A DNA stretch of 64,000 nt, taken from assembly GCF_000315625.1 (NCBI RefSeq), contig NW_005434650.1:628369-692368 (forward strand), written 5' to 3'. Positions 26,315 through 40,287 of the stretch are shown here, in pieces; position 1 is the stretch's first letter, and every line of letters starts with the position of its first letter. A program made the position numbers and the translations under genes. Source of the DNA: Guillardia theta CCMP2712. Taxonomy: Eukaryota; Protista; Cryptophyta. Under the pieces are notes generated by a model. The model searched no databases, was not told the origin of the DNA, and saw only the letters and a list, made by a program, of their open reading frames with translations.

Positions 26315-28874
26315 TCATATCACGATGATGTTGTGCTTCACAGAAGAGGAGGAGGAGGAGGAGGAGGAGGAGGAGGAGGAGGAAAAAAGTCTCCATAGCA
26401 GTTGAGCTGCCCTCTCCCACGAGCGCACCCAGACCTCTGGTCGGAACAGGAAACTGCTCCTTCTCAGTCAGCCATCGCAAAGACGCCCGTCTCCTCACCT
26501 GCTGCTCCGAGTTGCCTGCAGCCTCCTCCTCACCTCTGCCAGCTTCTTGTAGCGGGGGAACGGGGGGCACTTGCAAGATGCGCCTGCTTCACAGCTGGGC
26601 TGCAGCAGGCGCCGAGCGATCATGAGGAAGTCCTCCTCGTTCCTAGCGGTGAGATGAGAGATGCCGAGATCCTCGTTGAGACTTGATCCTAGAACATGCA
26701 CACCGGTCAAAGTGGGAGTGAAGTGAATTTGGATGCCAGAAGAACGAGGAGGAGGGAGGAGGGAGGCAGAGTTGGGGGAAGGAGGATTGAGGATGGAGGA
26801 GGAGGAGAAGGAGGAAGGAGGAAGGAGGAAGGAGGAGGAGTAGGGAGGGAAGAGGAGGAGGAGGAGGAGGGAGTGAGAGCAGGAGTATGGGTAGTAGGGT
26901 ATTAGATGAGGATGGAAGATGGAAGGGAGCAAGAGCTTGCGAGGGAGGAGAGGAGAATACCAACTCGATCACAAAGTCGTTCTCCGGGCAGCGTAAGAGT
27001 TGGAACCCCCGCCCAGAGAGCGTCCGCTGCTGTGCCATGAGCCCCGTAGCGGAGCGTGTCGAGATGTATCCAAGCGCGAGACTGGGAGGAATGAGTCGTG
27101 AGTTGAAAACAAGGGGCAGGAGGAGGAGGAAGAAGGATGCGGGAAGGAATGATGAGGAGGAAGAGGGATAACAGCAAGACCTTGAGGCTGATGTGCTCGG
27201 ATTCTTCGCTCAATTCAGTGAATTTCAGTCGTTGAGAAGAGATGTTTATCGAATGTGCTTGTGATCTGAGATGTCCTGCAGCAACATCCGCGTTGTTTCC
27301 TGCAAGATTTGATCAGATCAGATGCACGTACAGCCTGGTTTCAACAATGGATTCTGCTGTCGTCTCAAAATGATACGAGAGAAGTGAACTTTGAGAGAAT
27401 GGCTCTATACGACATGTATCTTGTCGTTTTCATATGGATTTGCCTTACCATGCTTCAACAACCAGAGAGCCGAGTCGTCGTCCGACAGAAGAGCTCTCAT
27501 CCACAGCGACCAGGTTGACCTCCACAGAGTCGTCAGACACCACGAGCACAACCTACCTCCTCACCTGTCGATCTTCAGCATCCTGTTAAAAGACGCGAGA
27601 ATGGGGCGATGGCCACAAGTCGACGTATTGATCCCTTCCTCCTCGGCTTCCTCCCGCGGCTGCTGCTCAAACTGCCAGCAAGTTCAGCACCCTGGCCTGC
27701 CGGACGCGACGAGGGACCTTCTCGGGGTTTCCAAGAGGGGGATGAGGGAACATATGAGCATGATCGGTCGCCAAGAAGGTGTGGGGGAGAACGACAAGCT
27801 TCTCCGACATCATCATCGAGTGTTCTGGTGGGACAACAACCTTGTCCGACAGGTACAAGTCGATCCAACAGGCTCCCGAGGTCCCCGCGTAGCTCCTGAA
27901 CAGCAGCTGGAGAGGAGCTGGACGCAGAGCAAGGACGTCTGCTCGTGCTCCCTTCGTGTGGCCGTTGAGGTCGAGCAAGATCTGCAGGACTGAATTTCAG
28001 ATTCTAGGAAGCAGGAGGGGAGAGGAACAGAGGCAGAGGGGGAAAGCAAGCTTCTCGTCACCATGATCTGTGCGGAGGAGATGCTTTCAGCCAGCTCTTG
28101 GGAGGAGGAGCTACGGCCAGTTACTGGTTCGACGCCGTGGATGACGTTCTCGACAGCAGCTTCCACCCTCCTCCTGCACTGACTCCCATCGCTCTTTGTC
28201 GTCATGATTGCGACGATGTGGAACTTTCTTGTGCTGTGGCTGGCCAGAAGCGTCTGCATGCTTTGACAAACAGTGTGAGCTCCGAAGTCGCTGGACATGT
28301 ATCCTATCGTGATTCGCCGATCTTGCCGCTTGCTCAGCGTCACGACGAGCTCAGGTAGCAGCAGGCGGCAGCTCCTCGCAACATGGTCCGCGTGATTCCT
28401 GCTCACCTCCAGCTGGACTCTTGGGTTCACGTCGTACACCTGCGCCTCCCACGGGGTGAGAGAAGAGAGGTTCCCCCACCACCTGGTCTTCCTGCCCTCC
28501 TGCTGGGGTTGGAGCTGGTGAGGTATCAGTACCTTCATCATCCACTCGAAAAGCTCCTCAAATTCTTCCCACTTGCATAATTCCCGCAGTCGGAGCAGGA
28601 CGGACGCGAACGCGTTTGACAGCAGCTGCTCTCCACCTGGGAAACTCCCGAGCTCGAGAGCCTCCCTGTAGTACCTTCCTGCTGCAGGGAAGTTTCCCAG
28701 CTCCTTCTCAGCTCGTCCGAGGGCCCCGAGGATCTGAGCTCTGTGCGGGTCAACCACTGCGCCCCACCTGTGCATCTTGAGGGCCTTGTGCAAGTGTTCG
28801 CGAGCTTCGACGAAGTTCTCAATGTCCAGGAGGACGATACCGAGGTCCTCGTGCAGGAACGCTGAAGTATGACC

Positions 28875-28933
<59 letters not shown>

Positions 28934-29790
28934 CGTCGGAAGGGGAGGGCATGGATGAGCAGCTTGCGATTCCAGTTTGAAGCCACTTTCTCGCTTTCTT
29001 CAGCTTCTTGCCCTCCCTGAGCGTTTTGCCCATCCCAAGGAAAGCGTCGCATATCACTGCACGTTGGCAGACCTGGCTCCTTCCAGCAGAAACTTGGGGT
29101 TGAGATGATGGAAGCTTATGCGCCCCGCACAGGGTGAGCACCTTCTTGAATGACTTCTCGGCGCCCTCAAGTTTCCTCGCCTCCAACAGGGTCCTCGCGT
29201 ATGCGAGCAGCAGGGACATGTCTTCCTTCTGCTGCTCCATCAGCTCCTTGTAGATATTGAGCGCTTCCTTGTACCTGTTCAACTTTCGCAAGACGAGAGC
29301 ATACTTGACCCAGACCTGCGCGTTCTGTGGCCCCTCGGCAAGCGCTGCCTTGTAGTATCTCGCGGCGTCTTCATACCTCTCCAGCATGGAGTAAGCCTGC
29401 GCTAGGAAAGGAAGTGCAGCTGTTCGATGCTCCTTGAGAGCTTCTTCATAGCACCTCACTGCTTGCTCCCAATCGCTCTTTCGCTCAGCGATGGCGCATT
29501 TTAGCATCTGGTCATCCGTGCTTAGCTCCAACCCTGCCTCCTCTCGCTGCAAGATCGTTTGTTCAGCTTCATCGACATGTCCAAGTTGGAAGTGAGAGAG
29601 TGCAAGATGTGTGTAGACGATCGTCTTCTGCTGAGTTGACAGTTCTCGTTGGAATCTCCGCAGGAGTATGCTCAAACAACGCACAGTGCGCGAGAAATGA
29701 AGGGCTTCAACTGACCGGCAGGAAGCAGCCCAGGCTGAAGCAGCATATCCTTAGTGTCGCTCTCCTTGCATGGCTCGTTCAAACAGGGAG
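26315..29790 (-). CDS. TPR-containing GT41 protein O-glycosyltransferase (OGT/SEC-like); 5' end uncertain (near gap)
   Basis: Multiple TPRs in ORF 27813-29684; IGYMSSDFGAH, LDLNGHTKGAR..LALRPAPLQ, ASFNRMLKID, LDTLRYGAHGTAADALWAGVP, terminal FLFRPEVWVRSWERAAQLLW..IIVI*. Confidence 0.88.
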
Positions 29791-30020
29791 CGAGTGAAAA
29801 CGTCAAGATCAGGATCAGCACTCTTGCAAATTGGAAGGGTGAACACATTCGTCAGTGAGGAGGGGAGGAATGAGGGAACTAAGGCGAGGGAGGGAGTGGG
29901 AGGGGAGGGGGAGAGGGGAGGGGAAGGGAGGGGAGGGGAAGGGAGGGGAGGGGAAGGAGGGAGGGAGGGAGGGAGGGGAGGGGAGGGGGGAGGGGGGGAG
30001 GGGAGGGAAGGTTGGTGGGT

Positions 30021-30120
30021 NNNNNNNNNNNNNNNNNNNNNNNNNNNNNNNNNNNNNNNNNNNNNNNNNNNNNNNNNNNNNNNNNNNNNNNNNNNNNNNN
30101 NNNNNNNNNNNNNNNNNNNN
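30021..30120. other. Assembly gap (100 N) flanked by G/A-rich low-complexity sequence
   Basis: Run of n. Confidence 1.
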
Positions 30121-30738: not shown

Positions 30739-33104
30739 ATGCGCGGCCTCTGTGTTTGTCTGGTTCTTTGCTCCGTCACCAGCCATGTCTTTCCTTCCAC
30801 TAGCACGAATTTCTTCTACTCAGACGGGTATTGCTTGCCTTCAAGTTCCAAGGGTCTCAGAAAGGCTGCCGTTCCCGGCAGCAGGGAGAAACTGGGCGTC
30901 TTGGGCTCCTTTGGAACCGCGCTGCACTCGACAGAGTTGCTGGATAGGATGCTCTCTACTGTGAGGTTAAGAGGAGGATCAAACGCTGAGGGAGGCGAGA
31001 ATGAAGATGAACCTCCTCGTCCTCCTATCGATGACTATCCTCCTCCTAGCGAAGAAGGCGACTTCCGTCCCAACACGGGCCGAGGAGGCTACAGGGACGA
31101 CCGCGACATAGAGGACGCGCGGCATCCAGATCATGCAGACTCATGGCGAAATGTGGATGAGTATCCTCCCGAAGGAGACTGGGCCGATCGCCGGAGGGGC
31201 AGCCGATCCGGAGGCTACAGGTGTCACTCGACGATCCCTTCCTATCCTGACGCGATGAGCAGAAGGAGAGCTGGCGGGCGTGACAGAGGCTACGGGGGAG
31301 GCTTTCAAGTGAGCAACGGAGCTTATGTAGTAGCGTGAATGACGCTCGTGTGAGCAGGACGATGATAGAAACGATGATGGAGGCATCCCTCCTCCTCCAC
31401 AGGAGGACAGGTATCATGAAGGTCGACCAGCCGATCACCGCGATCCTCGGGATCGAAGTTTTCGAGAAGGCATTCTTCACAGGGAGTACGAGAGGGCACA
31501 GGATCCTGAGTTCGATCGGAGAGCCCCGACGAGGTGAGAGGGTCAGGAGCGACTTCTCAGCTCGAAACTCACATCCTGCCTCAGACCACCGTTCGATGAC
31601 TACGAAGATTCGAGAAGGCCAGAGAAGGAAAACGAACCTCCTGGGGGCCGGCAGGAGGCTCGAGATCTGGACAGGGCGGCTAGGCCTGTTCCTTACCTTC
31701 CACGAGGATATGACTATGAGGAGAGGTGAGGCTCGAAGTAGTCTCATGACAAACGAACCCCCTGACCTAGTCAAAGGAGGCGGTCAGGACGGTTTGACGC
31801 ACGAGGGCCTCCTTCCCCGTATGACCAGCGATCCCGGTAGATCCCTTGGGGCACATGGTGGCCACGAGTGTCCTGATAGCCTTCAGGTACGATCGACCCT
31901 TGTCTCCGCCCAGGTTCAGCCGAGGTAGAGAGCGCGATCCCCGCGACCGAGACCCAGCCGATCGAGATCGCTATCGAAGCTATGGGCGAGGCAGAGCCGT
32001 CGACCAGCCACCGTATGAGAGGGATGCCTACTGGTGGAAGCGATATTTGCTTGATCGCAGGGTTGACGAGCTCGAGCAGGTCAAGAGATCGCACTCCCAG
32101 CATCCCCAAGGATCGTCGCTACCCTGATCCCAGGTGGGGGTCGAGAGGAATTTTCAGCTGCACTATGTGATGTTGGTGAAGGGCCGGCGAACCCGTCAGT
32201 CTGCTGATTCGCAATCTCTCTCGCTCAACTACAGCGGAAACGCTTAGACAGGCAGACTAGTTTGCAGAAAGACGTGAGAACACAGCTGACTCTCCCATCA
32301 GGTCTTCAACAGGTTTGGGAGGATTCTAGACGTTTACATCCCTCGTTCCTATTACAAAGGCATCCCAAGGGGTTTTGCCTTCGTGGAGTTTGAGAATTAT
32401 CTGGACTGCAAGGTCACTGGTGATGCCTGTCAGCCTGTTGAGCTCACGGAGGCTGTGCAGGCGGCTCTGAGGAGCTACGACGGAACGAGACTCGACGGGC
32501 GAGTCCTCAGCATCTGCTACGCACAGTGAGCTGCCCGTTGATGTGCTGCCGTGGTACTGACGAGTCGCTGGCAAGAATGAATAGGAAGAGCTCGGGGGAA
32601 ATGAGGAGGAGGAATCGCCAACCTCGCCATCCTGAGAGCTACAAGCGCCCGAGGCTTGATTCTGTTGACGAAGGCGGGCCAAGAGACAATCGGGACGAGT
32701 TTCCTCCTCCTCCTCGACCCGGCAGCACAGAACCTTTCTCCCGCTCCGTAGATCGGAGAGCTCGTGAGGACGAAGATGCTTATCGTGGACCCGATGGGCC
32801 GGATCGAGATGACAGCCCAGGCAGAGGGGAAAGATGGAGGACGCACGAAGAGGCTGAGGCGAGAGCTTGGCGAGATGTGGAAGGGCCCGGTGGAGAGGGG
32901 AGATGGAGAGAGGACGACCGAGATGGAGAAGATAGGAGAGAGGAAGAGGAGACTAGAGACAGAGAGCATGGAGAGGAGCAGGAGTCCCATGACAGGGACC
33001 CTCCTGCTCCTGAAAATGGAGGATACAGTGAAGGCCAGCGCGAGCAAGGGGCATCAGAGCATCACGATGACAACTACAAGCCCGACGAGCACCACGAGGG
33101 ATGA
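30739..33104 (+). CDS. SR-like RRM protein (SC35/SCL-type RRM) with R/D-rich repeats and signal peptide + LRGG leader; multi-exon
   Basis: SLLIRNL (RNP2), DVYIPRSYYKGIPRGFAFVEF (RNP1), MNRKSSGEMR; RD/RS-rich flanks; N-terminal MRGLCVCLVLCSVTS...VRLRGGS. Confidence 0.8.
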
Positions 33105-33204
33105 AATTTCCTTCAAACATAACATATGTACAAGTATGCAATCCTGTCTAACCGAGTCTTGCTATAAATAAACTATGACCATGCATGGAGCCAGCGCCGA
33201 AATG

Positions 33205-36200
33205 TCATAGATCATCGTCCATGTCGATCTCCTTGCTCAACCAGATGCACTGAGGAGCAATCTCCTGTGATATCCCCCGTACGTGTGTCAGGACCTGATT
33301 GTAATGCACGTCTTCGAACTTGCCATGCTGCAGCCTCTGCTCGTAGGGAGGAAGGATTTCCATAAGCGCCCTCAGGTTATTGACCGCCTCGACCTCCACA
33401 CGCTGAAGGTGCCGCTGCAAGGAGTCGTTAGCACTGCTCTTCTGCTTATGAGATTCCAACTCGACCATGACGATCTTCCTGATCATGAACGTCAGCATCT
33501 CGCTGATGTTGACTTGGTTCCCAGGGACGCTCTGGTAACTTTGGGAGCACTTCCTGGTGACTTCCTTGGGCAGGGGAGGCGGCAAGACCGTGCGGGGGAT
33601 TCCGACGGGAACGAGGATGCTGGTAACGCTATCAGCTTCCTGCGAGCCATTTGAAGAGTTGATAGAGTCGTGCCGACTCCCTGACGTTGACACTCCGGGG
33701 CTGGCTGGAGCAACGAGCGACATCGTCATTCCTGCATTCCGACCATTCACACTGTCCTTGACTGTGCAATGATTGGCAGCGAGCGGGTGGCCAACCACTG
33801 CGTTCGGAGAATGCTTGATGACTGTTGGGTGAGGGTTCGCCATGCCATTGGGGTAAATCAGAGGAGCATTGTCCGAGCCGTTGCTTCCTTGACCTTGCTT
33901 TTGAATTCTCTTCGTCGCCATCAGATCTACAACGTAAGCCTCCGGTGCCTGGGGATGGCAAGGAAACCCTGCAGTGACGGCAGGTCGATCAGCACTTGCC
34001 CCTTTGCTTCCTCCAGACTTCCGGCCTTTCTTCGGCCCTTGTCTTCCTTGGCTCAAATTCACACCGGGCGGGTTCTTCAGCAGGCCTGGCACCTGAGAAT
34101 GACCATTGGAGAATTGCGAAGCAACCAATTCGTGAGGACTAGCAACAACAGTGTTCAGCCCCTGATTGAGTGTAAGATGTTGAGCTTTTCCATCCTTCTT
34201 GTCCCCTTTATATACGGAGCTCGCCAGCAGCGGTGATGTTCTGCTCAAAGGTAGAAGGGTTGGAAGCTGATTGCCCAAACTGACATGCGCCATCGATCCA
34301 GAGACATTAGAGACGGGCTGAGCATTCGAGATCATATTCAAGTCGTTTCTGACTGGACCATTCGAGCTGGGAACAACCGATAAGCTCAATTCATGTGGCT
34401 TTGCAATGGTTGTAGAAGGCACATTCGACTGAAGGACTGTCGGTGCTCCCTTCTCCATTCCCAAGTACTGTCTTTGCTGCTGACTCTCACCTTGGCTCAG
34501 AAACCTCGTCATGGCCTCCACATTGCTGTGCAGTTTCTCCAGGTCCTTCCCCCTCTCGGTCGACACAGCCATTGAAACATCGCTCGGGTTAATTGCTACG
34601 CCAGATGCCCGTGCATGTCCATTATTCTGAGGAGGCATCACACTTTGGGGGGAAGTTCCGAATTCGACGGCTCGAGGACCTTGTCCCTTCTTTCTCCCTT
34701 TCTTCTTGTTGTTGGCTTGACTTCGGTTTGTAGTGCAAATTCCTCCGAATTCATTTCCTTGAGCGCTAAGAGGATTCAATTCTGTGTGTTGAATGATCAC
34801 ACCGACCTCTCCTTGGTCCTTTGCAAGTTCACTGGAGTTCATAATGGCAAACGTTGTCTGAGCATCATTCCCACTTTCAGTCTTCACTGCATGGTTCATC
34901 ACAGCTGTAGAAACGTCATCTTTCTTAATGGCCGGCAGAGCATGCGAGTTTTCCAGTCCGTTCAACGTCAATTGCACTTCTGCTACCGTCTCTATCAAGC
35001 TAGAATTATTTGATTTCACCTCCAAAGTCAATGCTTCCTGACCAGAGCTTGCGGGTGTATCCTCTTTTGTGACTGAAGATTGCGGTATTGGTCCAGTATC
35101 ATTCTCCAGTTTCTTTTCGTCTGCTATGCTCTCCTGACTACACTTTTCTGTGGAGACGTTTTCTTGCTGTGATGACAAATTTGGTTGTGATTTCTCAGCC
35201 TCGGACGAACCAGCAACTGCAATTGGAGTCTGTGAATCAACGTTAGGGTTCAACACTTTGTCCTCTGATTTGACATGTTCATGGCTGGTCAGACTGAAAT
35301 CAACATCGTTGTCTACTTCCAGAAATTCAAAGTCTGCATGATCACCACCATAATCTTGGCGATCTTGCTTCTGTGAGTCCCCTTGAAGCTTGCTCTTCTC
35401 AGACAACAACAAGTGCTCTCGATGTTTCTTCAATTTCGAAAATCTATCCAGCTTCGTCATGCTGTTTGCAGCCTTTGTCCTCTTAGAAATCATCACAGAA
35501 TTTTCTCTGATGTTCTTCGAAAAAGGACGTAACCGCTTCAATTCTTGCAATTCTTTTCTTTTCCTGTTGAAAGCAAATGATTGCGACCTCTTCTTTTTCA
35601 ATCCAAGATCAAGAGCAAGTTTCGAGTTGTCACAACGAAATGCAAAGTGCTTCCGTTGCTCAAAGTTCTCGATTCCTCGGATATTCCCAACAACACCTTT
35701 CTGTGCTGCTTCTGAAGCTCCGAAGTCATCACACTCTAAATCCATTGGAAACTGAATCTTCTGTTCATATAGCCTCCATACTTTCTCCAAACCTGATTCA
35801 AAGCTTCTTATCCACCTTTCTGGATCGAATAGTGGAGCGCTTAATCGGTTAGCTTGCAGTTTCGTCTTCCATTCTCTCAACATCACCGGATCGTTTCCAA
35901 GTTTTACCGCCAATTCTTCATACTCCGCTAGATTCGATACTGCCATTTCAGGCATTCCGACAGACTTTGCGATACATGTAGCCACAAGCGAAGGCCAGTT
36001 ATCGCCACTGACAGTCACGAAGGGAACTCCAGCCCACAGCATATCACTAGCTGTTGTATGTCCGTTGTAAACAATGGTATCCAAGCAGAGGTCGGCCAGC
36101 GTGACTCGTTTGAGATGTTCGATCTTCGGGCTACAGGGTGGTCCAAACACAAGGCGTTCTGGGGGTATTCCTGATCGTTTCGCTTGTAGTTGTAGCCTTG

Positions 36201-38157
36201 GCACAGCTGCCTTCGGATGCTTGTATAACCAAATTACACTGTTCGGCACTCTACGAAGAATATTCATCCAGATTTGAAACAAGTCTGCAGTAATCCTACC
36301 AAGTCTGCAAAAGTTACAAAATACAACTGTTGGATGATCTGGGAGTTGATGATCGTCCCTGGTAGGAAGATTCTTTTGATCTAAAATTTCTGGATAAAGG
36401 TGACGGAAGGAGTTTGTCTGATAACAGTAAGGCATATGTAGAATTCGTTCAGTATAGAATTCCCGGTGCTTCTCTGGGCATACAGTTCGATCGGCGACGT
36501 TGAAATCGATGTAATCTGCCCCCATTGTGCCTGGATAAGCTAAGTAAACAAGCTGCACGGGTGCAGGGCGAAGCGCGCTGATTCCATTACGGTCCCCAGC
36601 AGTATGCCCATTCAAATTGACCAGGATGTGTATTCCATCTTCAGCAATCGCCTCTGCACATTTCTTGTCGTTGTCTCGTTGAGAAAAATTACGAAAATGC
36701 TCAATTTCTTGAGCAATTGTTTTTCGGTAATGCGAATTATCATCATCTCGTGTGATGGAGTAACAGAAAATTTCAAATTTAGAGTCGTCATGCAGCAAGA
36801 GAGCGCTTTGGATCAAGTCTGCTGTTGGATGGTCCACAAAATCTGAGCTGATATAACCTATTCTTAGACGCGGAATGCCATTTTCGGAAGGATTCAAGAT
36901 TATCTTTTCATCCCTCCATGCATGGTATTCATCGTCATCTTCTTTGTTCGGTTTTTGCTTGATGAGTTTCAAAGCTTTTTCCTTCGCATCTTTCGCATAT
37001 GCCTCCGCTATCCGTCGAATCGTACCCTTGTCAAAGCTTACTCCAGAAGAGGTGTAATGCAACGCATGAAAGGGCATAATGACAGGAACCTCACCATTAT
37101 CCAATTGATTCAATACATGTCGCACTAGTGGTTCAATATTTCTGTACCATTCCTCCCATGCGCACGCACAAAGCAAGTCAAACACAAGTTGAGAAAAGCA
37201 GTCTTGTCCTTTCGAGGAAATATCATTGCCTTCTAGCCGTTCTCTAGACTTAGCAATATTCTCTTTCAACATCTCATCGTACCGCTCTTGCCCAATGCAC
37301 TCGGGACAATGCCAAAAGTCAGGTGGAACCGTCGCATTACTGAGGCACATACACGCAAAACAGAATGACCGACAACACGAATCGCAGGTGGTCGACTCGA
37401 TCTCATGATATCCACACGAGCAGCACTGCAACGCCTGTTCTGGCAGCTTCCATGGACCTCTACATGTTTGACTTACAACCAGCACATGTTTTTCCAATTT
37501 TTCATGGGCGTGATGTATACAAGCATTGCATGTCCAGCGATGGGAAAGAGGAAAATTTGCAAGAATACCCATGCAGCTCTTATGAAAGCTAGATGGACAC
37601 TCAGAACAATGGACGTCAACTCCAGCATGCCCACATACATCGCAAAACCTCGAATTGTTGTATTTCTTCTGCAACTTTCGCAAGAGTTGATTTTCCGTTT
37701 CATTGGCGCCCGTAACAACCACTTCAAATTGATCCATTCTCTCTGAAAGAGCTTCTTCTGGAAGTATAGCGATCTCTGAATACGATACTTGGCTCCCCTC
37801 GCTGAAGGCCGACCCACAAGCTGGACAAAACTTCCAAACACCTAAATTTTCACGGATTAAGGGTCCCCAGAAGATACCATGGCAATGACTACAAATGTAT
37901 CCAGTATCTCTGCCAAAAAGTGGCTCCTCATTAAACCTCAAGCGTTTCCTGTTCCTTTTTGGACCTTTGCTATGCCGTTTTCGTCCAAACACGGTAGGCT
38001 TTGGACAAGTTTCTGGGGTATCCCTTGGACCTGTTTCTGGGGGTTCCTGTGGAGCAGTTTCTTGGGGGACGCTTTCAGGATGTTCGTTGACAGCAAGAGT
38101 GGGATCCGAATCGACATCATCCACTGCAACCAGTGAAAAGTCCGCCGTTGAATCCAT
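33205..38157 (-). CDS. Intronless 1650-aa Zn-ribbon + 2x PHD finger + GT41 (O-GlcNAc transferase-type) catalytic domain + long disordered tail
   Basis: CSHC..CPAC; CDVC..CSECPSSFHKSC..WTCNAC; CCSC..CDSCCRSFCFAC..WHCPEC; RIGYISSDFVDHPT, ILVNLNGHT, LRPAPVQ..YPGTMGA, KIEHLKR, LDTIVYNGHTTASDMLWAGVP; basic NLS-like patches. Confidence 0.9.
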   Translation of the reverse strand: MDSTADFSLVAVDDVDSDPTLAVNEHPESVPQETAPQEPPETGPRDTPETCPKPTVFGRKRHSKGPKRNRKRLRFNEEPLFGRDTGYICSHCHGIFWGPLIRENLGVWKFCPACGSAFSEGSQVSYSEIAILPEEALSERMDQFEVVVTGANETENQLLRKLQKKYNNSRFCDVCGHAGVDVHCSECPSSFHKSCMGILANFPLSHRWTCNACIHHAHEKLEKHVLVVSQTCRGPWKLPEQALQCCSCGYHEIESTTCDSCCRSFCFACMCLSNATVPPDFWHCPECIGQERYDEMLKENIAKSRERLEGNDISSKGQDCFSQLVFDLLCACAWEEWYRNIEPLVRHVLNQLDNGEVPVIMPFHALHYTSSGVSFDKGTIRRIAEAYAKDAKEKALKLIKQKPNKEDDDEYHAWRDEKIILNPSENGIPRLRIGYISSDFVDHPTADLIQSALLLHDDSKFEIFCYSITRDDDNSHYRKTIAQEIEHFRNFSQRDNDKKCAEAIAEDGIHILVNLNGHTAGDRNGISALRPAPVQLVYLAYPGTMGADYIDFNVADRTVCPEKHREFYTERILHMPYCYQTNSFRHLYPEILDQKNLPTRDDHQLPDHPTVVFCNFCRLGRITADLFQIWMNILRRVPNSVIWLYKHPKAAVPRLQLQAKRSGIPPERLVFGPPCSPKIEHLKRVTLADLCLDTIVYNGHTTASDMLWAGVPFVTVSGDNWPSLVATCIAKSVGMPEMAVSNLAEYEELAVKLGNDPVMLREWKTKLQANRLSAPLFDPERWIRSFESGLEKVWRLYEQKIQFPMDLECDDFGASEAAQKGVVGNIRGIENFEQRKHFAFRCDNSKLALDLGLKKKRSQSFAFNRKRKELQELKRLRPFSKNIRENSVMISKRTKAANSMTKLDRFSKLKKHREHLLLSEKSKLQGDSQKQDRQDYGGDHADFEFLEVDNDVDFSLTSHEHVKSEDKVLNPNVDSQTPIAVAGSSEAEKSQPNLSSQQENVSTEKCSQESIADEKKLENDTGPIPQSSVTKEDTPASSGQEALTLEVKSNNSSLIETVAEVQLTLNGLENSHALPAIKKDDVSTAVMNHAVKTESGNDAQTTFAIMNSSELAKDQGEVGVIIQHTELNPLSAQGNEFGGICTTNRSQANNKKKGRKKGQGPRAVEFGTSPQSVMPPQNNGHARASGVAINPSDVSMAVSTERGKDLEKLHSNVEAMTRFLSQGESQQQRQYLGMEKGAPTVLQSNVPSTTIAKPHELSLSVVPSSNGPVRNDLNMISNAQPVSNVSGSMAHVSLGNQLPTLLPLSRTSPLLASSVYKGDKKDGKAQHLTLNQGLNTVVASPHELVASQFSNGHSQVPGLLKNPPGVNLSQGRQGPKKGRKSGGSKGASADRPAVTAGFPCHPQAPEAYVVDLMATKRIQKQGQGSNGSDNAPLIYPNGMANPHPTVIKHSPNAVVGHPLAANHCTVKDSVNGRNAGMTMSLVAPASPGVSTSGSRHDSINSSNGSQEADSVTSILVPVGIPRTVLPPPLPKEVTRKCSQSYQSVPGNQVNISEMLTFMIRKIVMVELESHKQKSSANDSLQRHLQRVEVEAVNNLRALMEILPPYEQRLQHGKFEDVHYNQVLTHVRGISQEIAPQCIWLSKEIDMDDDL

Positions 38158-39228: not shown

Positions 39229-40287
39229 TCAGTCGGCTGCCTTCAAAAATTCTCCTCCTATGCTGCAGACCAGCTTGCCAACCCGCGTCTCCTCTCTCAT
39301 CTTTGCAATGGCTGTCTGTACCTCGGACATGCGGTAAACGGAGCTGAGATGAGGCCTGATCTTCCCATCGAGCACCAGGGGCCATACCTTAGTTCGTATT
39401 GCCTTGAACATCTTGTTCTTGAACTCCTCCTCGCTGTTGCGGATGGAGCATCCCAGCACTTCAACCTTCTTCTCTATCAACCTTTGAATATTGAATTTCC
39501 CCTCCTCCACCATGCAGCCTTGGAATACAAGTTTCCCCCCTGGTTTCAGCAACTGAATGTTGCGATCGATCGTATCTCCTCCTATGCAGTCTATCACAGC
39601 ATCCACACCCTTGCCGCATGTTGCCGTCCTTACGATCTTGTCGATGTCCTCTGTGTTGCTCTCACATGCGTAGTCAGCTCCCAAGGACAAGCAGAATTCA
39701 ACCTTCTGCTTGGAGCGACAAGTCGTGAAGACCTCGATGCCGAAGTTTCTTGCAACCTGGATCATGATGTGCCCGACCCCACCCGCCCCTCCATGGATGA
39801 GGACCGACGTTCCTTCCTTCAGCTCCGCCAGCTCGAACAGGCAAGACCATGCAACGCACAGGCCCAGCGGCATAGCAGCAGCGACATTCCAGTCAAATCC
39901 TCTAGGGAGCAGCAGCGCCTGTTGCTTCTTGCAAACACAGAATTCAGCGTAACCTCCGCCTGAGACCATCGCACAGACTGCTCCGCCCTCGACCATGCCA
40001 TCGGTCTCCTCATCTACGATCATGATCTCACCAGACACCTCCATGCCGATGATGTCGGTGCATCCTCTCGGGGCAACGAACCTTCCCTTCACCTGCTCCA
40101 AGTCTGCACCACTCACCGCGAACGAACGGACCCGCAGGAGCATCTCTCCTTCCCCTGGCCATGGAATCGGACGAGCATACATCGCTATCGCGTCCTCCTC
40201 CTTCACAGCCCATCCAAGCTGCTGTTGCTTCCCCGTCGGCTTCACCACCCTGGAGGGTCCGCATGCCTCCCCCACCGGCGCGCTCAT
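39229..40287 (-). CDS. NAD(P)H:quinone oxidoreductase, PIG3/zeta-crystallin (MDR) family; intronless
   Basis: DLEQVKG..IIGMEVSG, VSGGGYAE, VLIHGGAGGVG, GVDAVIDCIG, GKLV. Confidence 0.9.
   Translation of the reverse strand: MSAPVGEACGPSRVVKPTGKQQQLGWAVKEEDAIAMYARPIPWPGEGEMLLRVRSFAVSGADLEQVKGRFVAPRGCTDIIGMEVSGEIMIVDEETDGMVEGGAVCAMVSGGGYAEFCVCKKQQALLLPRGFDWNVAAAMPLGLCVAWSCLFELAELKEGTSVLIHGGAGGVGHIMIQVARNFGIEVFTTCRSKQKVEFCLSLGADYACESNTEDIDKIVRTATCGKGVDAVIDCIGGDTIDRNIQLLKPGGKLVFQGCMVEEGKFNIQRLIEKKVEVLGCSIRNSEEEFKNKMFKAIRTKVWPLVLDGKIRPHLSSVYRMSEVQTAIAKMREETRVGKLVCSIGGEFLKAAD

What the first reader, a model, noticed from the sequence alone, without database searches (positions are those of the whole stretch)
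36030..36330. Active-site substitutions in the PHD-GT41 protein (FNQLYK -> FCRLGR)
Seen: the segment reads VFCNFCRLGRIT, whereas human OGT (recalled) has YCNFNQLYKID with Lys842 essential for catalysis, and the neighbouring TPR-GT41 keeps FNRMLKID. Other UDP-binding motifs (KIEH, NGHTT, DMLWAG) and DFVDHP are retained. Inference: altered donor specificity, or a catalytically weak UDP-sugar-sensing pseudoenzyme on chromatin.
Basis: partly seen in the sequence, partly recalled or inferred. Interest (0 to 1): 0.7.

Follow-up and report, generated by a model that had tools for sequence, protein, structure and literature searches.

The report
Arginine-for-lysine PHD-linked GT41 glycosyltransferase clade
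An expressed Guillardia theta gene joins PHD zinc fingers to an O-GlcNAc-transferase-like domain whose "essential" catalytic lysine is replaced by arginine; this change is fixed in a whole conserved subfamily, so it marks a re-tooled and probably still active enzyme, not a decaying one.

Summary
An intronless 1650-aa ORF (33205-38157, minus strand) reads VVFCNFCRLGRIT and aligns without gaps to human OGT IVYCNFNQLYKID. That gives N838C, Q839R, Y841G and K842R.

It is not a one-off:
- 29 relatives (45-71% identity) all carry R-L-G-R. Two are further G. theta paralogues; the rest are unnamed metagenome proteins.
- They form one clade (UFBoot 99) next to eukaryotic OGT/SEC-type sequences.
- None has TPRs, and several have a PHD finger.
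- Every canonical UDP and acceptor-serine contact that I could map is invariant in the clade. Only 19% of domain positions are invariant overall.

Across 363 GT41 domains, Lys is near-universal. Arg occurs in the clade and about four bacterial lineages, always with a non-aromatic residue at position 841.

The published donor-specificity triad (L866/R904/C917 in OGT) reads Y/R/Y here. The uridine-reading Arg is kept, but a Tyr that is reported to clash with the N-acetyl group is present.

My best reading (about 0.5) is an active UDP-sugar transferase with an Arg-Arg diphosphate clamp and a re-modelled sugar pocket. A pseudoenzyme or sensor remains possible (about 0.25). No activity was tested. 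Another note in this scan covers the same ORF's architecture.

The parts
33205..38157 (-). Intronless ORF of 1650 aa: Zn ribbon, PHD finger, PHD-like Cys8 finger, GT41 catalytic domain, about 700 aa of low-complexity linker, and a conserved C-terminal region
   Evidence: ORF list and translation. Pfam PF13844 scores 367.6 bits against a cut-off of 25. No joints were seen in laid reads or contigs. The public model of this gene is only 437 aa (P0121).
36289..36312 (-). Motif F616-C-R-L-G-R-I-T623, equivalent to human OGT F837-N-Q-L-Y-K-I-D844. R618 (36304-36306) sits at the Q839 position, G620 (36298-36300) at Y841 and R621 (36295-36297) at K842.
   Evidence: Ungapped alignment to PDB OGT chains. 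R-L-G-R is present in 29/29 relatives.
36217..36225 (-). Y645-K646-H647, equivalent to OGT L866-R867-F868. L866 is one of the three published donor-specificity positions.
   Evidence: Alignment. Clade counts are Y 26/29, K 23/29 and H 24/29. Roles of L866 and F868 come from PMC10027727 and PMC8085782.
36106..36126 (-). K678-I-E-H681-L-K-R684, equivalent to OGT K898, H901 and R904 (ribose, uracil stacking, uracil O4). All three are retained.
   Evidence: Invariant in 28/28 relatives that cover this region.
36043..36069 (-). Y697-N-G-H700-T701-T702-A-S-D705, equivalent to OGT C917, H920, T921, T922 and D925. Tyr replaces Cys917; the rest is retained.
   Evidence: Invariant in the clade. Across 363 GT41 domains the 917 position is Y in 220 and C in 81.
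36823..36843 (-). D439-F-V-D-H443-P-T445, equivalent to OGT D554, H558 and T560 (retained). D447 replaces H562 just downstream.
37057..37071 (-). F363-H-A-L366-H367, equivalent to OGT H498-H499-S-M501-L502. The L502-to-His change is clade-specific. The H498-to-Phe change is shared with oomycete OGTs.
   Evidence: M501, L502 and Y841 form the N-acetyl pocket according to PMC3660302.
35668..37200 (-). GT41 catalytic domain (about aa 320-830), GT-B fold, without the metazoan intervening domain
   Evidence: AlphaFold2 model: pLDDT 89.4, pTM 0.88. Foldseek TM-scores (by query) are 0.79-0.80 to fly and human OGT, 0.74 to XcOGT and 0.69 to SPY. The alignment jumps across OGT chain positions 396-505.
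37519..37644 (-). PHD finger (aa 172-213, Cys4-His-Cys3)
   Evidence: Pfam PF00628 scores 20.9 bits here, below the cut-off of 24. The homologous finger passes the cut-off in P0014, P0028, P0033, P0040, P0058 and the G. theta C23 paralogue. The Cys and His ligands are invariant in alignment A2.
37297..37425 (-). Second zinc finger, PHD/RING-like (aa 245-287), with eight invariant Cys, about 35 aa before the catalytic domain
   Evidence: Alignment A2. No Pfam hit.
37816..37893 (-). CxxC...CxxC zinc-ribbon-like element (aa 89-114)
   Evidence: Alignment A2. Conserved in the closer orthologues only.
33235..33501 (-). Conserved C-terminal region (aa 1553-1641), function unknown
   Evidence: BLAST to P0014, P0015, P0016, P0026 and P0096. 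No Pfam family.
32991..33372 (-). Transcript 3' end / 3' UTR: pile of RNA-seq reads in the gene's orientation
   Evidence: Run X18, raw RNA reads. Depth is 7-26 here and sparse in the gene body, including 35856-36237.
26902..29684 (-). Neighbouring multi-exon TPR-GT41 gene that keeps the catalytic Lys (FNRMLKID at 27567-27590)

Best explanation
The gene encodes a functional member of a conserved GT41 subfamily that I call the 'RLGR clade'. The subfamily has no TPRs and carries PHD fingers. It descends from the eukaryotic OGT/SEC-type lineage.

In this clade the two side chains that hold the donor's diphosphate in OGT (Gln839 and Lys842) are both Arg (R618, R621). The aromatic residue between them (Tyr841) is Gly, which makes room for the guanidinium group. 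I infer that R621 takes over Lys842's role of neutralising the beta-phosphate and stabilising the UDP leaving group.

The uridine, ribose and alpha-phosphate contacts are unchanged: K898, H901, R904, D925, H920, T921 and T922. So are the residues around the acceptor serine and the sugar hydroxyls: D554, H558, T560 and L653. The donor is therefore most likely still a UDP-sugar.

The pocket that holds the N-acetyl group in OGT is re-lined: L502 to His, Y841 to Gly, C917 to Tyr, G654 to Ala. The sugar is therefore probably not GlcNAc, or it is bound in a different pose.

The acceptor groove is also changed: H562 to Asp, Y632 to His, K634 to Ala, F868 to His. Substrate targeting by TPRs is replaced by zinc fingers of the PHD type, which suggests chromatin proteins as targets.

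Shown here: the substitutions, their fixation, the retention of the other site residues, the fold, and transcription. Inferred: activity, the role of R621, the donor identity, and the chromatin targets.
For: 1. Alignment and numbering.
2. R-L-G-R is present in 29/29 relatives at 45-71% identity. The equivalents of D554, H558, P559, T560, T633, R637, L653, P897, K898, H901, R904, N918, H920, T921, T922 and D925 are invariant in every relative that covers them, while only 92 of 474 scored domain positions are invariant.
3. The clade is monophyletic (SH-aLRT 99; 89.4/UFBoot 99). It sits with eukaryotic OGT/SEC-type sequences (99.2/99). Its terminal branches (0.04-0.45) are shorter than those of other G. 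theta GT41 paralogues (1.4-2.35).
4. G. theta keeps a canonical OGT (L011: NQLYK, LRF, C at 917), so the RLGR genes are extra copies.
5. Arg at 842 always co-occurs with a non-aromatic 841 (34/34 domains, about 5 lineages), against 249 aromatic and 78 non-aromatic among Lys domains.
6. High-confidence GT-B model matching OGT.
7. The gene is transcribed and has an intact 1650-aa ORF.
8. Literature: K842 and Q839 contact the phosphates, and K842M and Q839A abolish activity (PMC2556091). The N-acetyl cave is M501/L502/Y841 (PMC3660302). C917 lies next to the N-acetyl group (PMC12645433). Tyr at the 917 position clashes with the N-acetyl group, and R904 reads uridine O4 (PMC10027727). In the metal-independent inverting GT-B enzyme POFUT1, an Arg (R240) is the beta-phosphate/leaving-group residue (PMC3180450).
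Against: - No activity, ligand-binding or structural data exist for any Arg-842 GT41. No paper mentions K842R.
- Lys and Arg are not interchangeable in a fixed background: POFUT1 R240K is dead (PMC3180450). Function therefore depends on compensating changes that I can only infer.
- Conservation of the site is equally expected for a protein that only binds a UDP-sugar.
- Tyr at the 917 position is the commonest state across my GT41 sample (220 of 363). It is not by itself evidence of a new donor.
- I could not inspect model coordinates, so no distances from R618 or R621 to the diphosphate site were measured.
- The PHD score in the target is below Pfam's cut-off (20.9 against 24).
Confidence: 0.5

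Rival explanations
1. Pseudoenzyme or sensor. The domain still binds a UDP-sugar but transfers slowly or not at all. It would act as a nucleotide-sugar-dependent scaffold that the PHD fingers recruit to chromatin.
For: Lys842 is the canonical essential residue, and K842M is inactive (PMC2556091). Lys is found in 327 of 363 GT41 domains. Non-catalytic roles of OGT are documented (bioRxiv 10.1101/2020.10.22.351288, listed). Some bacterial Arg-842 domains (P0064, P0070 domain 1) also have degraded UDP sites. Binding-site conservation is compatible with a sensor.
Against: Residues needed for chemistry on the acceptor rather than for nucleotide binding are also invariant: the equivalents of H558, T560, D554 and R637. 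The change is to another cationic residue with a coordinated Y841G, not to a neutral residue. The clade has persisted through at least three paralogous lineages with short branches.
Confidence: 0.25
2. An ordinary O-GlcNAc transferase. K842R is a conservative, functionally neutral change, the donor is still UDP-GlcNAc, and only the substrate targeting differs (PHD instead of TPR).
For: The uridine, ribose and phosphate contacts and the sugar-hydroxyl contacts (T560, L653, H920) are retained. The closest solved structures are OGTs. Tyr at the 917 position is common in GT41.
Against: All parts of the N-acetyl pocket differ in a fixed way: L502H, Y841G and C917Y. The donor triad is Y/R/Y, not the L/R/C found in OGT/SEC and in G. 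theta's own canonical OGT. Tyr at 917 is reported to clash with the N-acetyl group (PMC10027727).
Confidence: 0.15
3. A SPY-like O-fucosyltransferase that uses GDP-fucose.
For: Tyr at the C917/Y744 position, as in SPY (PMC10027727).
Against: The guanine-reading Lys (SPY K689) is Tyr here, and the position that must be small in SPY (A731) is the uridine-reading Arg (R684). The clade branches with OGT/SEC-type sequences, not SPY-like ones. The match to SPY structures is weaker: TM 0.69 against 0.80, and E 1e-42 against 3e-96.
Confidence: 0.05

Closest known systems
Eukaryotic O-GlcNAc transferase, OGT/SEC type (human OGT, PDB 3PE4/4GZ5; Drosophila OGT 5A01)
   Same: - GT41 GT-B catalytic domain with N-terminal transitional helices; about 31-40% identity (E 3e-96, TM 0.80).
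- Same residues for uracil, ribose and alpha-phosphate: K898, H901, R904, D925, H920, T921, T922.
- Same residues near the acceptor serine: D554, H558, T560, R637.
   Different: - No TPRs; a zinc ribbon and two PHD-type fingers take their place. There is also no intervening domain.
- K842 is Arg, Q839 is Arg and Y841 is Gly.
- The N-acetyl pocket is changed: L502H and C917Y.
- L866 is Tyr.
- The acceptor groove is changed: H562D, Y632H, K634A, F868H.
- A 700-aa low-complexity tail and a conserved C-terminal module are present.
Arabidopsis SPINDLY (nucleocytoplasmic protein O-fucosyltransferase, GT41; PDB 7Y4I/8DTI)
   Same: Same GT41 fold and no intervening domain. Tyr at the sugar-discriminating position (SPY Y744).
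   Different: SPY keeps the catalytic Lys (K665) and reads guanine with K689 and A731. The target has Tyr and Arg at those positions. SPY has TPRs. The target does not branch with SPY-like sequences.
POFUT1 (GT65; PMC3180450), with FUT8 and POFUT2 (from my own knowledge): metal-independent inverting GT-B fucosyltransferases
   Same: An Arg (POFUT1 R240), not a Lys, salt-bridges the beta-phosphate and promotes leaving-group departure. This is a mechanistic precedent for the role proposed for R621.
   Different: These are unrelated GT families that use GDP-fucose and act on secretory-pathway proteins. The resemblance is in mechanism only, not in family membership.
Other Guillardia theta GT41 paralogues
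   Same: They belong to the documented cryptomonad GT41 expansion: 60 genes in G. theta according to PMC6260743, and 83 exon-level matches here.
   Different: At least 14 other loci, including the neighbouring TPR-GT41 and the canonical OGT (L011), keep Lys. Only three loci carry RLGR.

Membership tests
GT41 (Pfam PF13844, Glyco_transf_41) | Sequence match above the curated cut-off | tested here: met
   367.6 bits against a cut-off of 25, E 1e-109.
GT41 (Pfam PF13844, Glyco_transf_41) | GT-B two-Rossmann fold superposable on solved GT41 structures | tested here: met
   AF2 pLDDT 89.4. Foldseek TM-scores (by query) 0.79-0.80 to OGT, 0.74 to XcOGT and 0.69 to SPY.
OGT/SEC-type protein O-GlcNAc transferase | Catalytic Lys at the K842 position | tested here: not met
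   Arg621. Arg in 29/29 clade members.
OGT/SEC-type protein O-GlcNAc transferase | Donor-specificity triad L866 / R904 / C917 (PMC10027727) | tested here: not met
   The target has Y645 / R684 / Y697, so only R904 is kept. G. theta's canonical OGT (L011) has L/R/C.
OGT/SEC-type protein O-GlcNAc transferase | UDP-binding residues K898, H901, R904, D925, H920, T921 and T922 | tested here: met
   All are present and invariant in the clade.
OGT/SEC-type protein O-GlcNAc transferase | N-terminal TPR superhelix for substrate selection | tested here: not met
   No TPR family in the target or in the clade members scanned. The precomputed Pfam lists of clade hits show only PF13844, with or without PF00628.
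OGT/SEC-type protein O-GlcNAc transferase | Phylogenetic placement with OGT/SEC sequences | tested here: met
   The clade is sister to, or within, the eukaryotic OGT/SEC-type group (88; 99.2/99). The trees use the C-terminal catalytic lobe only, and the more thorough tree search did not finish.
OGT/SEC-type protein O-GlcNAc transferase | Transfer of GlcNAc from UDP-GlcNAc to Ser/Thr | not testable with these tools
   This needs an enzyme assay.
SPY-type protein O-fucosyltransferase | Triad K689 / A731 / Y744 for GDP-fucose | tested here: not met
   The target has Y / R / Y; only the Tyr matches (PMC10027727).
PHD finger (PF00628) | Cys4-His-Cys3 ligand pattern and a profile match | tested here: inconclusive
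   The ligand pattern is present and invariant in orthologues. The target scores 20.9 bits, below the cut-off of 24. The homologous finger scores 24.7-33.1 bits in six relatives. Histone binding was not tested.

The most novel reading that the evidence does not exclude
The RLGR clade is a separate nuclear glycosylation system. In this reading, a chromatin-reader-guided GT41 uses an Arg-Arg diphosphate clamp to put a sugar other than GlcNAc, from a UDP donor, onto histones or other chromatin proteins in cryptophytes and related protists. It would be a third donor/mechanism class within GT41, beside OGT/SEC (UDP-GlcNAc) and SPY (GDP-fucose).
Probability: 0.25. Interest if true: 0.8.

Novelty: new variant of a known kind. 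Interest (0 to 1): 0.58.

Why it matters
Lys842 is treated as the invariant catalytic residue of GT41. K842M is the standard "dead" OGT, and a photocaged K842 is used as an on-switch.

A natural clade under purifying selection has Arg there, together with coordinated changes at positions 839 and 841 and in the N-acetyl pocket. This gives a direct test of what the residue does. It may also reveal a third donor specificity in GT41, after UDP-GlcNAc and GDP-fucose.

The clade has swapped the TPR substrate adaptor for PHD-type fingers. It is therefore a candidate writer of a chromatin glycosylation mark in an alga whose GT41 family is hugely expanded and unstudied.

The public gene model is truncated to 437 aa, so existing annotation does not show the fusion.

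Tried and rejected
1. H498 to Phe as a sign of inactivation. Rejected: oomycete OGT/SEC-type proteins also read QPFHAL.
2. C917 to Tyr as a clade-specific change. Rejected: Tyr is the commonest state in GT41 (220 of 363). It still bears on how GlcNAc would fit, according to PMC10027727.
3. N838 to Cys as part of the signature. Rejected: the position is C, N or G within the clade.
4. A "relocated lysine" (R867 to K646) that compensates for K842R. Weakened: K646 is present in only 23/29 relatives, and no other invariant gained Lys appears among the 38 group-specific positions.
5. Synteny between the window and a metagenome orthologue's contig (UEV neighbour). Not found, so the organisms behind the unnamed orthologues remain unidentified.
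6. Literature on K842R, on Guillardia OGT, or on PHD-GT41 fusions. Nothing found.
7. PMC3064491 could not be read.
8. The thorough tree search did not finish in two runs. I replaced it with a reduced LG+G4 tree with 1000 ultrafast bootstraps. A first attempt failed on a thread setting.
9. Contig-based runs X1, X2 and X4 are collinear with the ORF but also cover the flanks, so they may be DNA. Only X18 counts as RNA evidence.
10. Model coordinates are not exposed, so I could make no distance or clash measurements.
11. I did not run the exhaustive representative-protein search. The claim does not rest on absence of relatives, and the operators flagged the search as costly.
Full report
**Observation.** The window (G000 contig C24:628369-692368) carries an uninterrupted 1650-codon ORF on the minus strand at 33205-38157. 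Pfam places a GT41 domain at about aa 330-860 (367.6 bits, cut-off 25) and a sub-threshold PHD finger at aa 172-213.

phmmer against all PDB chains gives human OGT as the best match (E 3e-96). It aligns VVFCNFCRLGRIT to IVYCNFNQLYKID without a gap. Using chain index + 308 = OGT numbering (checked on D925, H901 and R904), the target has:
- C617 at N838
- R618 at Q839
- G620 at Y841
- R621 at K842
- T623 at D844

The neighbouring gene (about 26.9-29.7 kb, minus strand) is a TPR-GT41 that keeps FNRMLKID.

**Organism, gene model and expression.** A paralogue is named GUITHDRAFT_68991 of Guillardia theta CCMP2712 (P0127). This agrees with earlier notes of the scan. The public model of the target itself is only 437 aa (P0121), so the zinc-finger/GT41 fusion is not in the annotation.

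Raw RNA-seq reads (run X18, a 3'-biased library) pile up in the gene's orientation at 32991-33372, right at and below the stop codon. They occur sparsely in the gene body, including 35856-36237. No read or contig shows a splice joint. Runs X1, X2 and X4 are collinear contigs but may be DNA. The gene is therefore transcribed and intronless. I gave read laying 5701 letters.

**Fold.** An AlphaFold2 model of aa 320-870, built with a 59-sequence alignment, has pLDDT 89.4 and pTM 0.88. Foldseek finds Drosophila and human OGT at TM 0.79-0.80, XcOGT at 0.74 and SPINDLY at 0.69. The metazoan intervening domain is absent: the alignment jumps from OGT chain position 396 to 505.

**It is a clade, not an accident.** Two word-index protein searches found 28 unnamed metagenome or genome proteins that are 45-71% identical over the domain. 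A genome scan found two further G. theta loci: C24:794946-795712 (CNFCRLGRIS) and C23:329850-330661 (CTFNRLGRIT).
- All 29 relatives carry R-L-G-R. The 838 position varies (C 21, N 5, G 3).
- None has TPRs.
- The PHD finger passes Pfam's cut-off in P0014, P0028, P0033, P0040, P0058 and the C23 paralogue.
- The zinc ligands of two fingers are invariant in the N-terminal alignment.

A tree of the C-terminal catalytic lobe recovers the clade as monophyletic: SH-aLRT 99 in the quick C20 tree, and 89.4/UFBoot 99 in a reduced LG+G4 tree. The clade is joined to eukaryotic OGT/SEC-type sequences and the K-type G. theta paralogues (88; 99.2/99). All three G. theta RLGR genes fall inside it. Its terminal branches (0.04-0.45) are much shorter than those of other G. 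theta paralogues (1.4-2.35).

G. theta also has a canonical OGT: locus L011, with CNFNQLYKID, LRF and CNAHTT. It groups with oomycete OGTs. The GT41 expansion itself is published: 60 genes in G. theta and 88 in Goniomonas (PMC6260743).

**How unusual is Arg?** In 363 GT41 catalytic domains from the retrieved proteins, the 842 position is Lys in 327 and Arg in 34. Of the Arg domains, 28 belong to the clade and 6 are bacterial: P0188, P0006 domain 2, P0070 domain 1 and three domains of P0064. Those included in the trees branch apart from the clade.

Arg always comes with a non-aromatic residue at 841 (G, N, A, I, V or S; 34/34 domains, about five lineages). Lys domains have an aromatic residue there in 249 of 327 cases. 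If the five lineages are independent, the chance of this pattern is about 0.24^5, roughly 8e-4. This points to steric coupling between positions 841 and 842. No paper in the library mentions K842R.

**State of the active site.** Across the 29 relatives, only 92 of 474 scored positions are invariant (mean conservation 0.70). Yet the equivalents of the following residues are invariant wherever covered, as are R618, L619, G620, R621 and Y697: D554, H558, P559, T560, T633, R637, L653, P897, K898, H901, R904, N918, H920, T921, T922 and D925.

The literature assigns these roles:
- K842 and Q839 contact the phosphates. K842M, Q839A, D925A, K898A, H498A and R637A abolish activity (PMC2556091).
- T560, L653, G654 and H920 bind the sugar hydroxyls and acetamide. 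M501, L502 and Y841 form the N-acetyl cave (PMC3660302).
- C917 lies next to the N-acetyl group (PMC12645433).
- Kumar et al. define a donor-specificity triad: L866/R904/C917 in OGT against K689/A731/Y744 in SPY. R904 reads uridine O4, and a Tyr at 917 clashes with the N-acetyl group (PMC10027727).

The clade reads Y/R/Y at that triad. It also has His at L502, Gly at Y841 and Ala at G654. Nucleotide recognition therefore looks like UDP, while the C2-substituent pocket is rebuilt.

Groove residues that a molecular-dynamics study implicated in peptide binding are changed as well: K634 to Ala and F868 to His (PMC8085782). H562 to Asp and Y632 to His change alongside them.

**Mechanistic reading.** The most economical explanation is a working enzyme in which R621, helped by R618, replaces the Gln/Lys pair as the diphosphate clamp and leaving-group stabiliser. 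Gly620 provides the room.

A precedent exists in POFUT1, a metal-independent inverting GT-B transferase. Its Arg240 salt-bridges the beta-phosphate and is the key catalytic residue, and R240K is dead (PMC3180450). That result also shows that Lys and Arg are not freely interchangeable, which fits the coordinated 839/841/842 change seen here.

Fixation of the new residues, invariance of the acceptor-side residues and slow evolution all argue against a decaying site. However, a UDP-sugar-binding pseudoenzyme would show much the same conservation. I hold that rival at about 0.25. Unchanged O-GlcNAc transfer (0.15) and SPY-like fucosylation (0.05) fit the pocket and triad data less well.

Chromatin targeting is an inference from PHD homology and from basic NLS-like runs in the sequence.

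**Corrections to tempting arguments.**
- H498 to Phe is shared with oomycete OGTs.
- Tyr at 917 is the majority state in GT41.
- The gained Lys at the R867 position is not universal in the clade.

**Novelty.** I found no description of Arg-842 GT41s or of PHD-GT41 fusions. I class this as a new variant of a known kind: clearly GT41, derived from the OGT/SEC lineage, but failing three defining OGT features (Lys842, the L/R/C triad and TPRs).

**Limits.**
- No biochemical data are available.
- No model coordinates were available for measuring distances.
- The orthologues are unnamed metagenome sequences.
- The trees use only the C-terminal lobe, about 200 columns.

Noticed in passing
window 33205-38157 vs protein P0121: The public G. 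theta gene model for this locus is only 437 aa (the GT41 core). The genome has an uninterrupted 1650-aa ORF, and the orthologues are 1600-1800 aa long. The annotation therefore misses the zinc-finger N-terminus and the long tail.
   Followed up: partly
window 34001-38000: The target ORF has 45-46% G+C, against 52-57% in the flanks. It is intronless in a genome whose neighbouring genes (for example the TPR-GT41 at 26.9-29.7 kb) have introns. The C23 paralogue is also one ORF (798 aa), while the C24:794-795 kb paralogue is split into exons.
   Followed up: no
window 33235-33501 (aa 1553-1641): A roughly 90-aa C-terminal region is conserved in several orthologues (28-33% identity) after about 700 aa of low-complexity sequence. 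It has no Pfam family.
   Followed up: partly
protein P0123 (metagenome orthologue), aa 10-69: One RLGR-clade member shows a weak chromodomain hit (19.2 bits, cut-off 25.1) in front of the GT41 domain. This may be another chromatin-reader fusion in the same clade.
   Followed up: no
protein P0064 (bacterial, 2526 aa), domains at about 553, 1084 and 2335: All three GT41 domains carry T/S-R-x-[IV]-R, so Arg sits at both the 839 and 842 positions as in the cryptophyte clade. However, their UDP-site motifs are degraded (H901 and H920 positions changed). This is an independent double-Arg case.
   Followed up: partly
G000 genome-wide: There are 83 exon-level PF13844 matches on more than 25 contigs. 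This fits the published count of 60 GT41 genes in G. theta. Most paralogues sit on very long branches.
   Followed up: partly
window ~29950-30060: A run of N (assembly gap) lies inside a low-complexity, Pro/Ser/Gly-rich region. It shows as a run of X in the ORF translations.
   Followed up: no
window 39229-40287 (-): An ORF of 352 aa is a zinc-type alcohol dehydrogenase or quinone-reductase-like protein (ADH_zinc_N 105.6 bits, ADH_N 34 bits). It lies upstream of the target.
   Followed up: no
window 26902-27213 (-), neighbouring TPR-GT41: The neighbour keeps Lys842 but reads RYGAHGTAADALWAG. It therefore has Tyr at the C917 position and Gly at the T921 position, another divergent donor site in the same family.
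   Followed up: no
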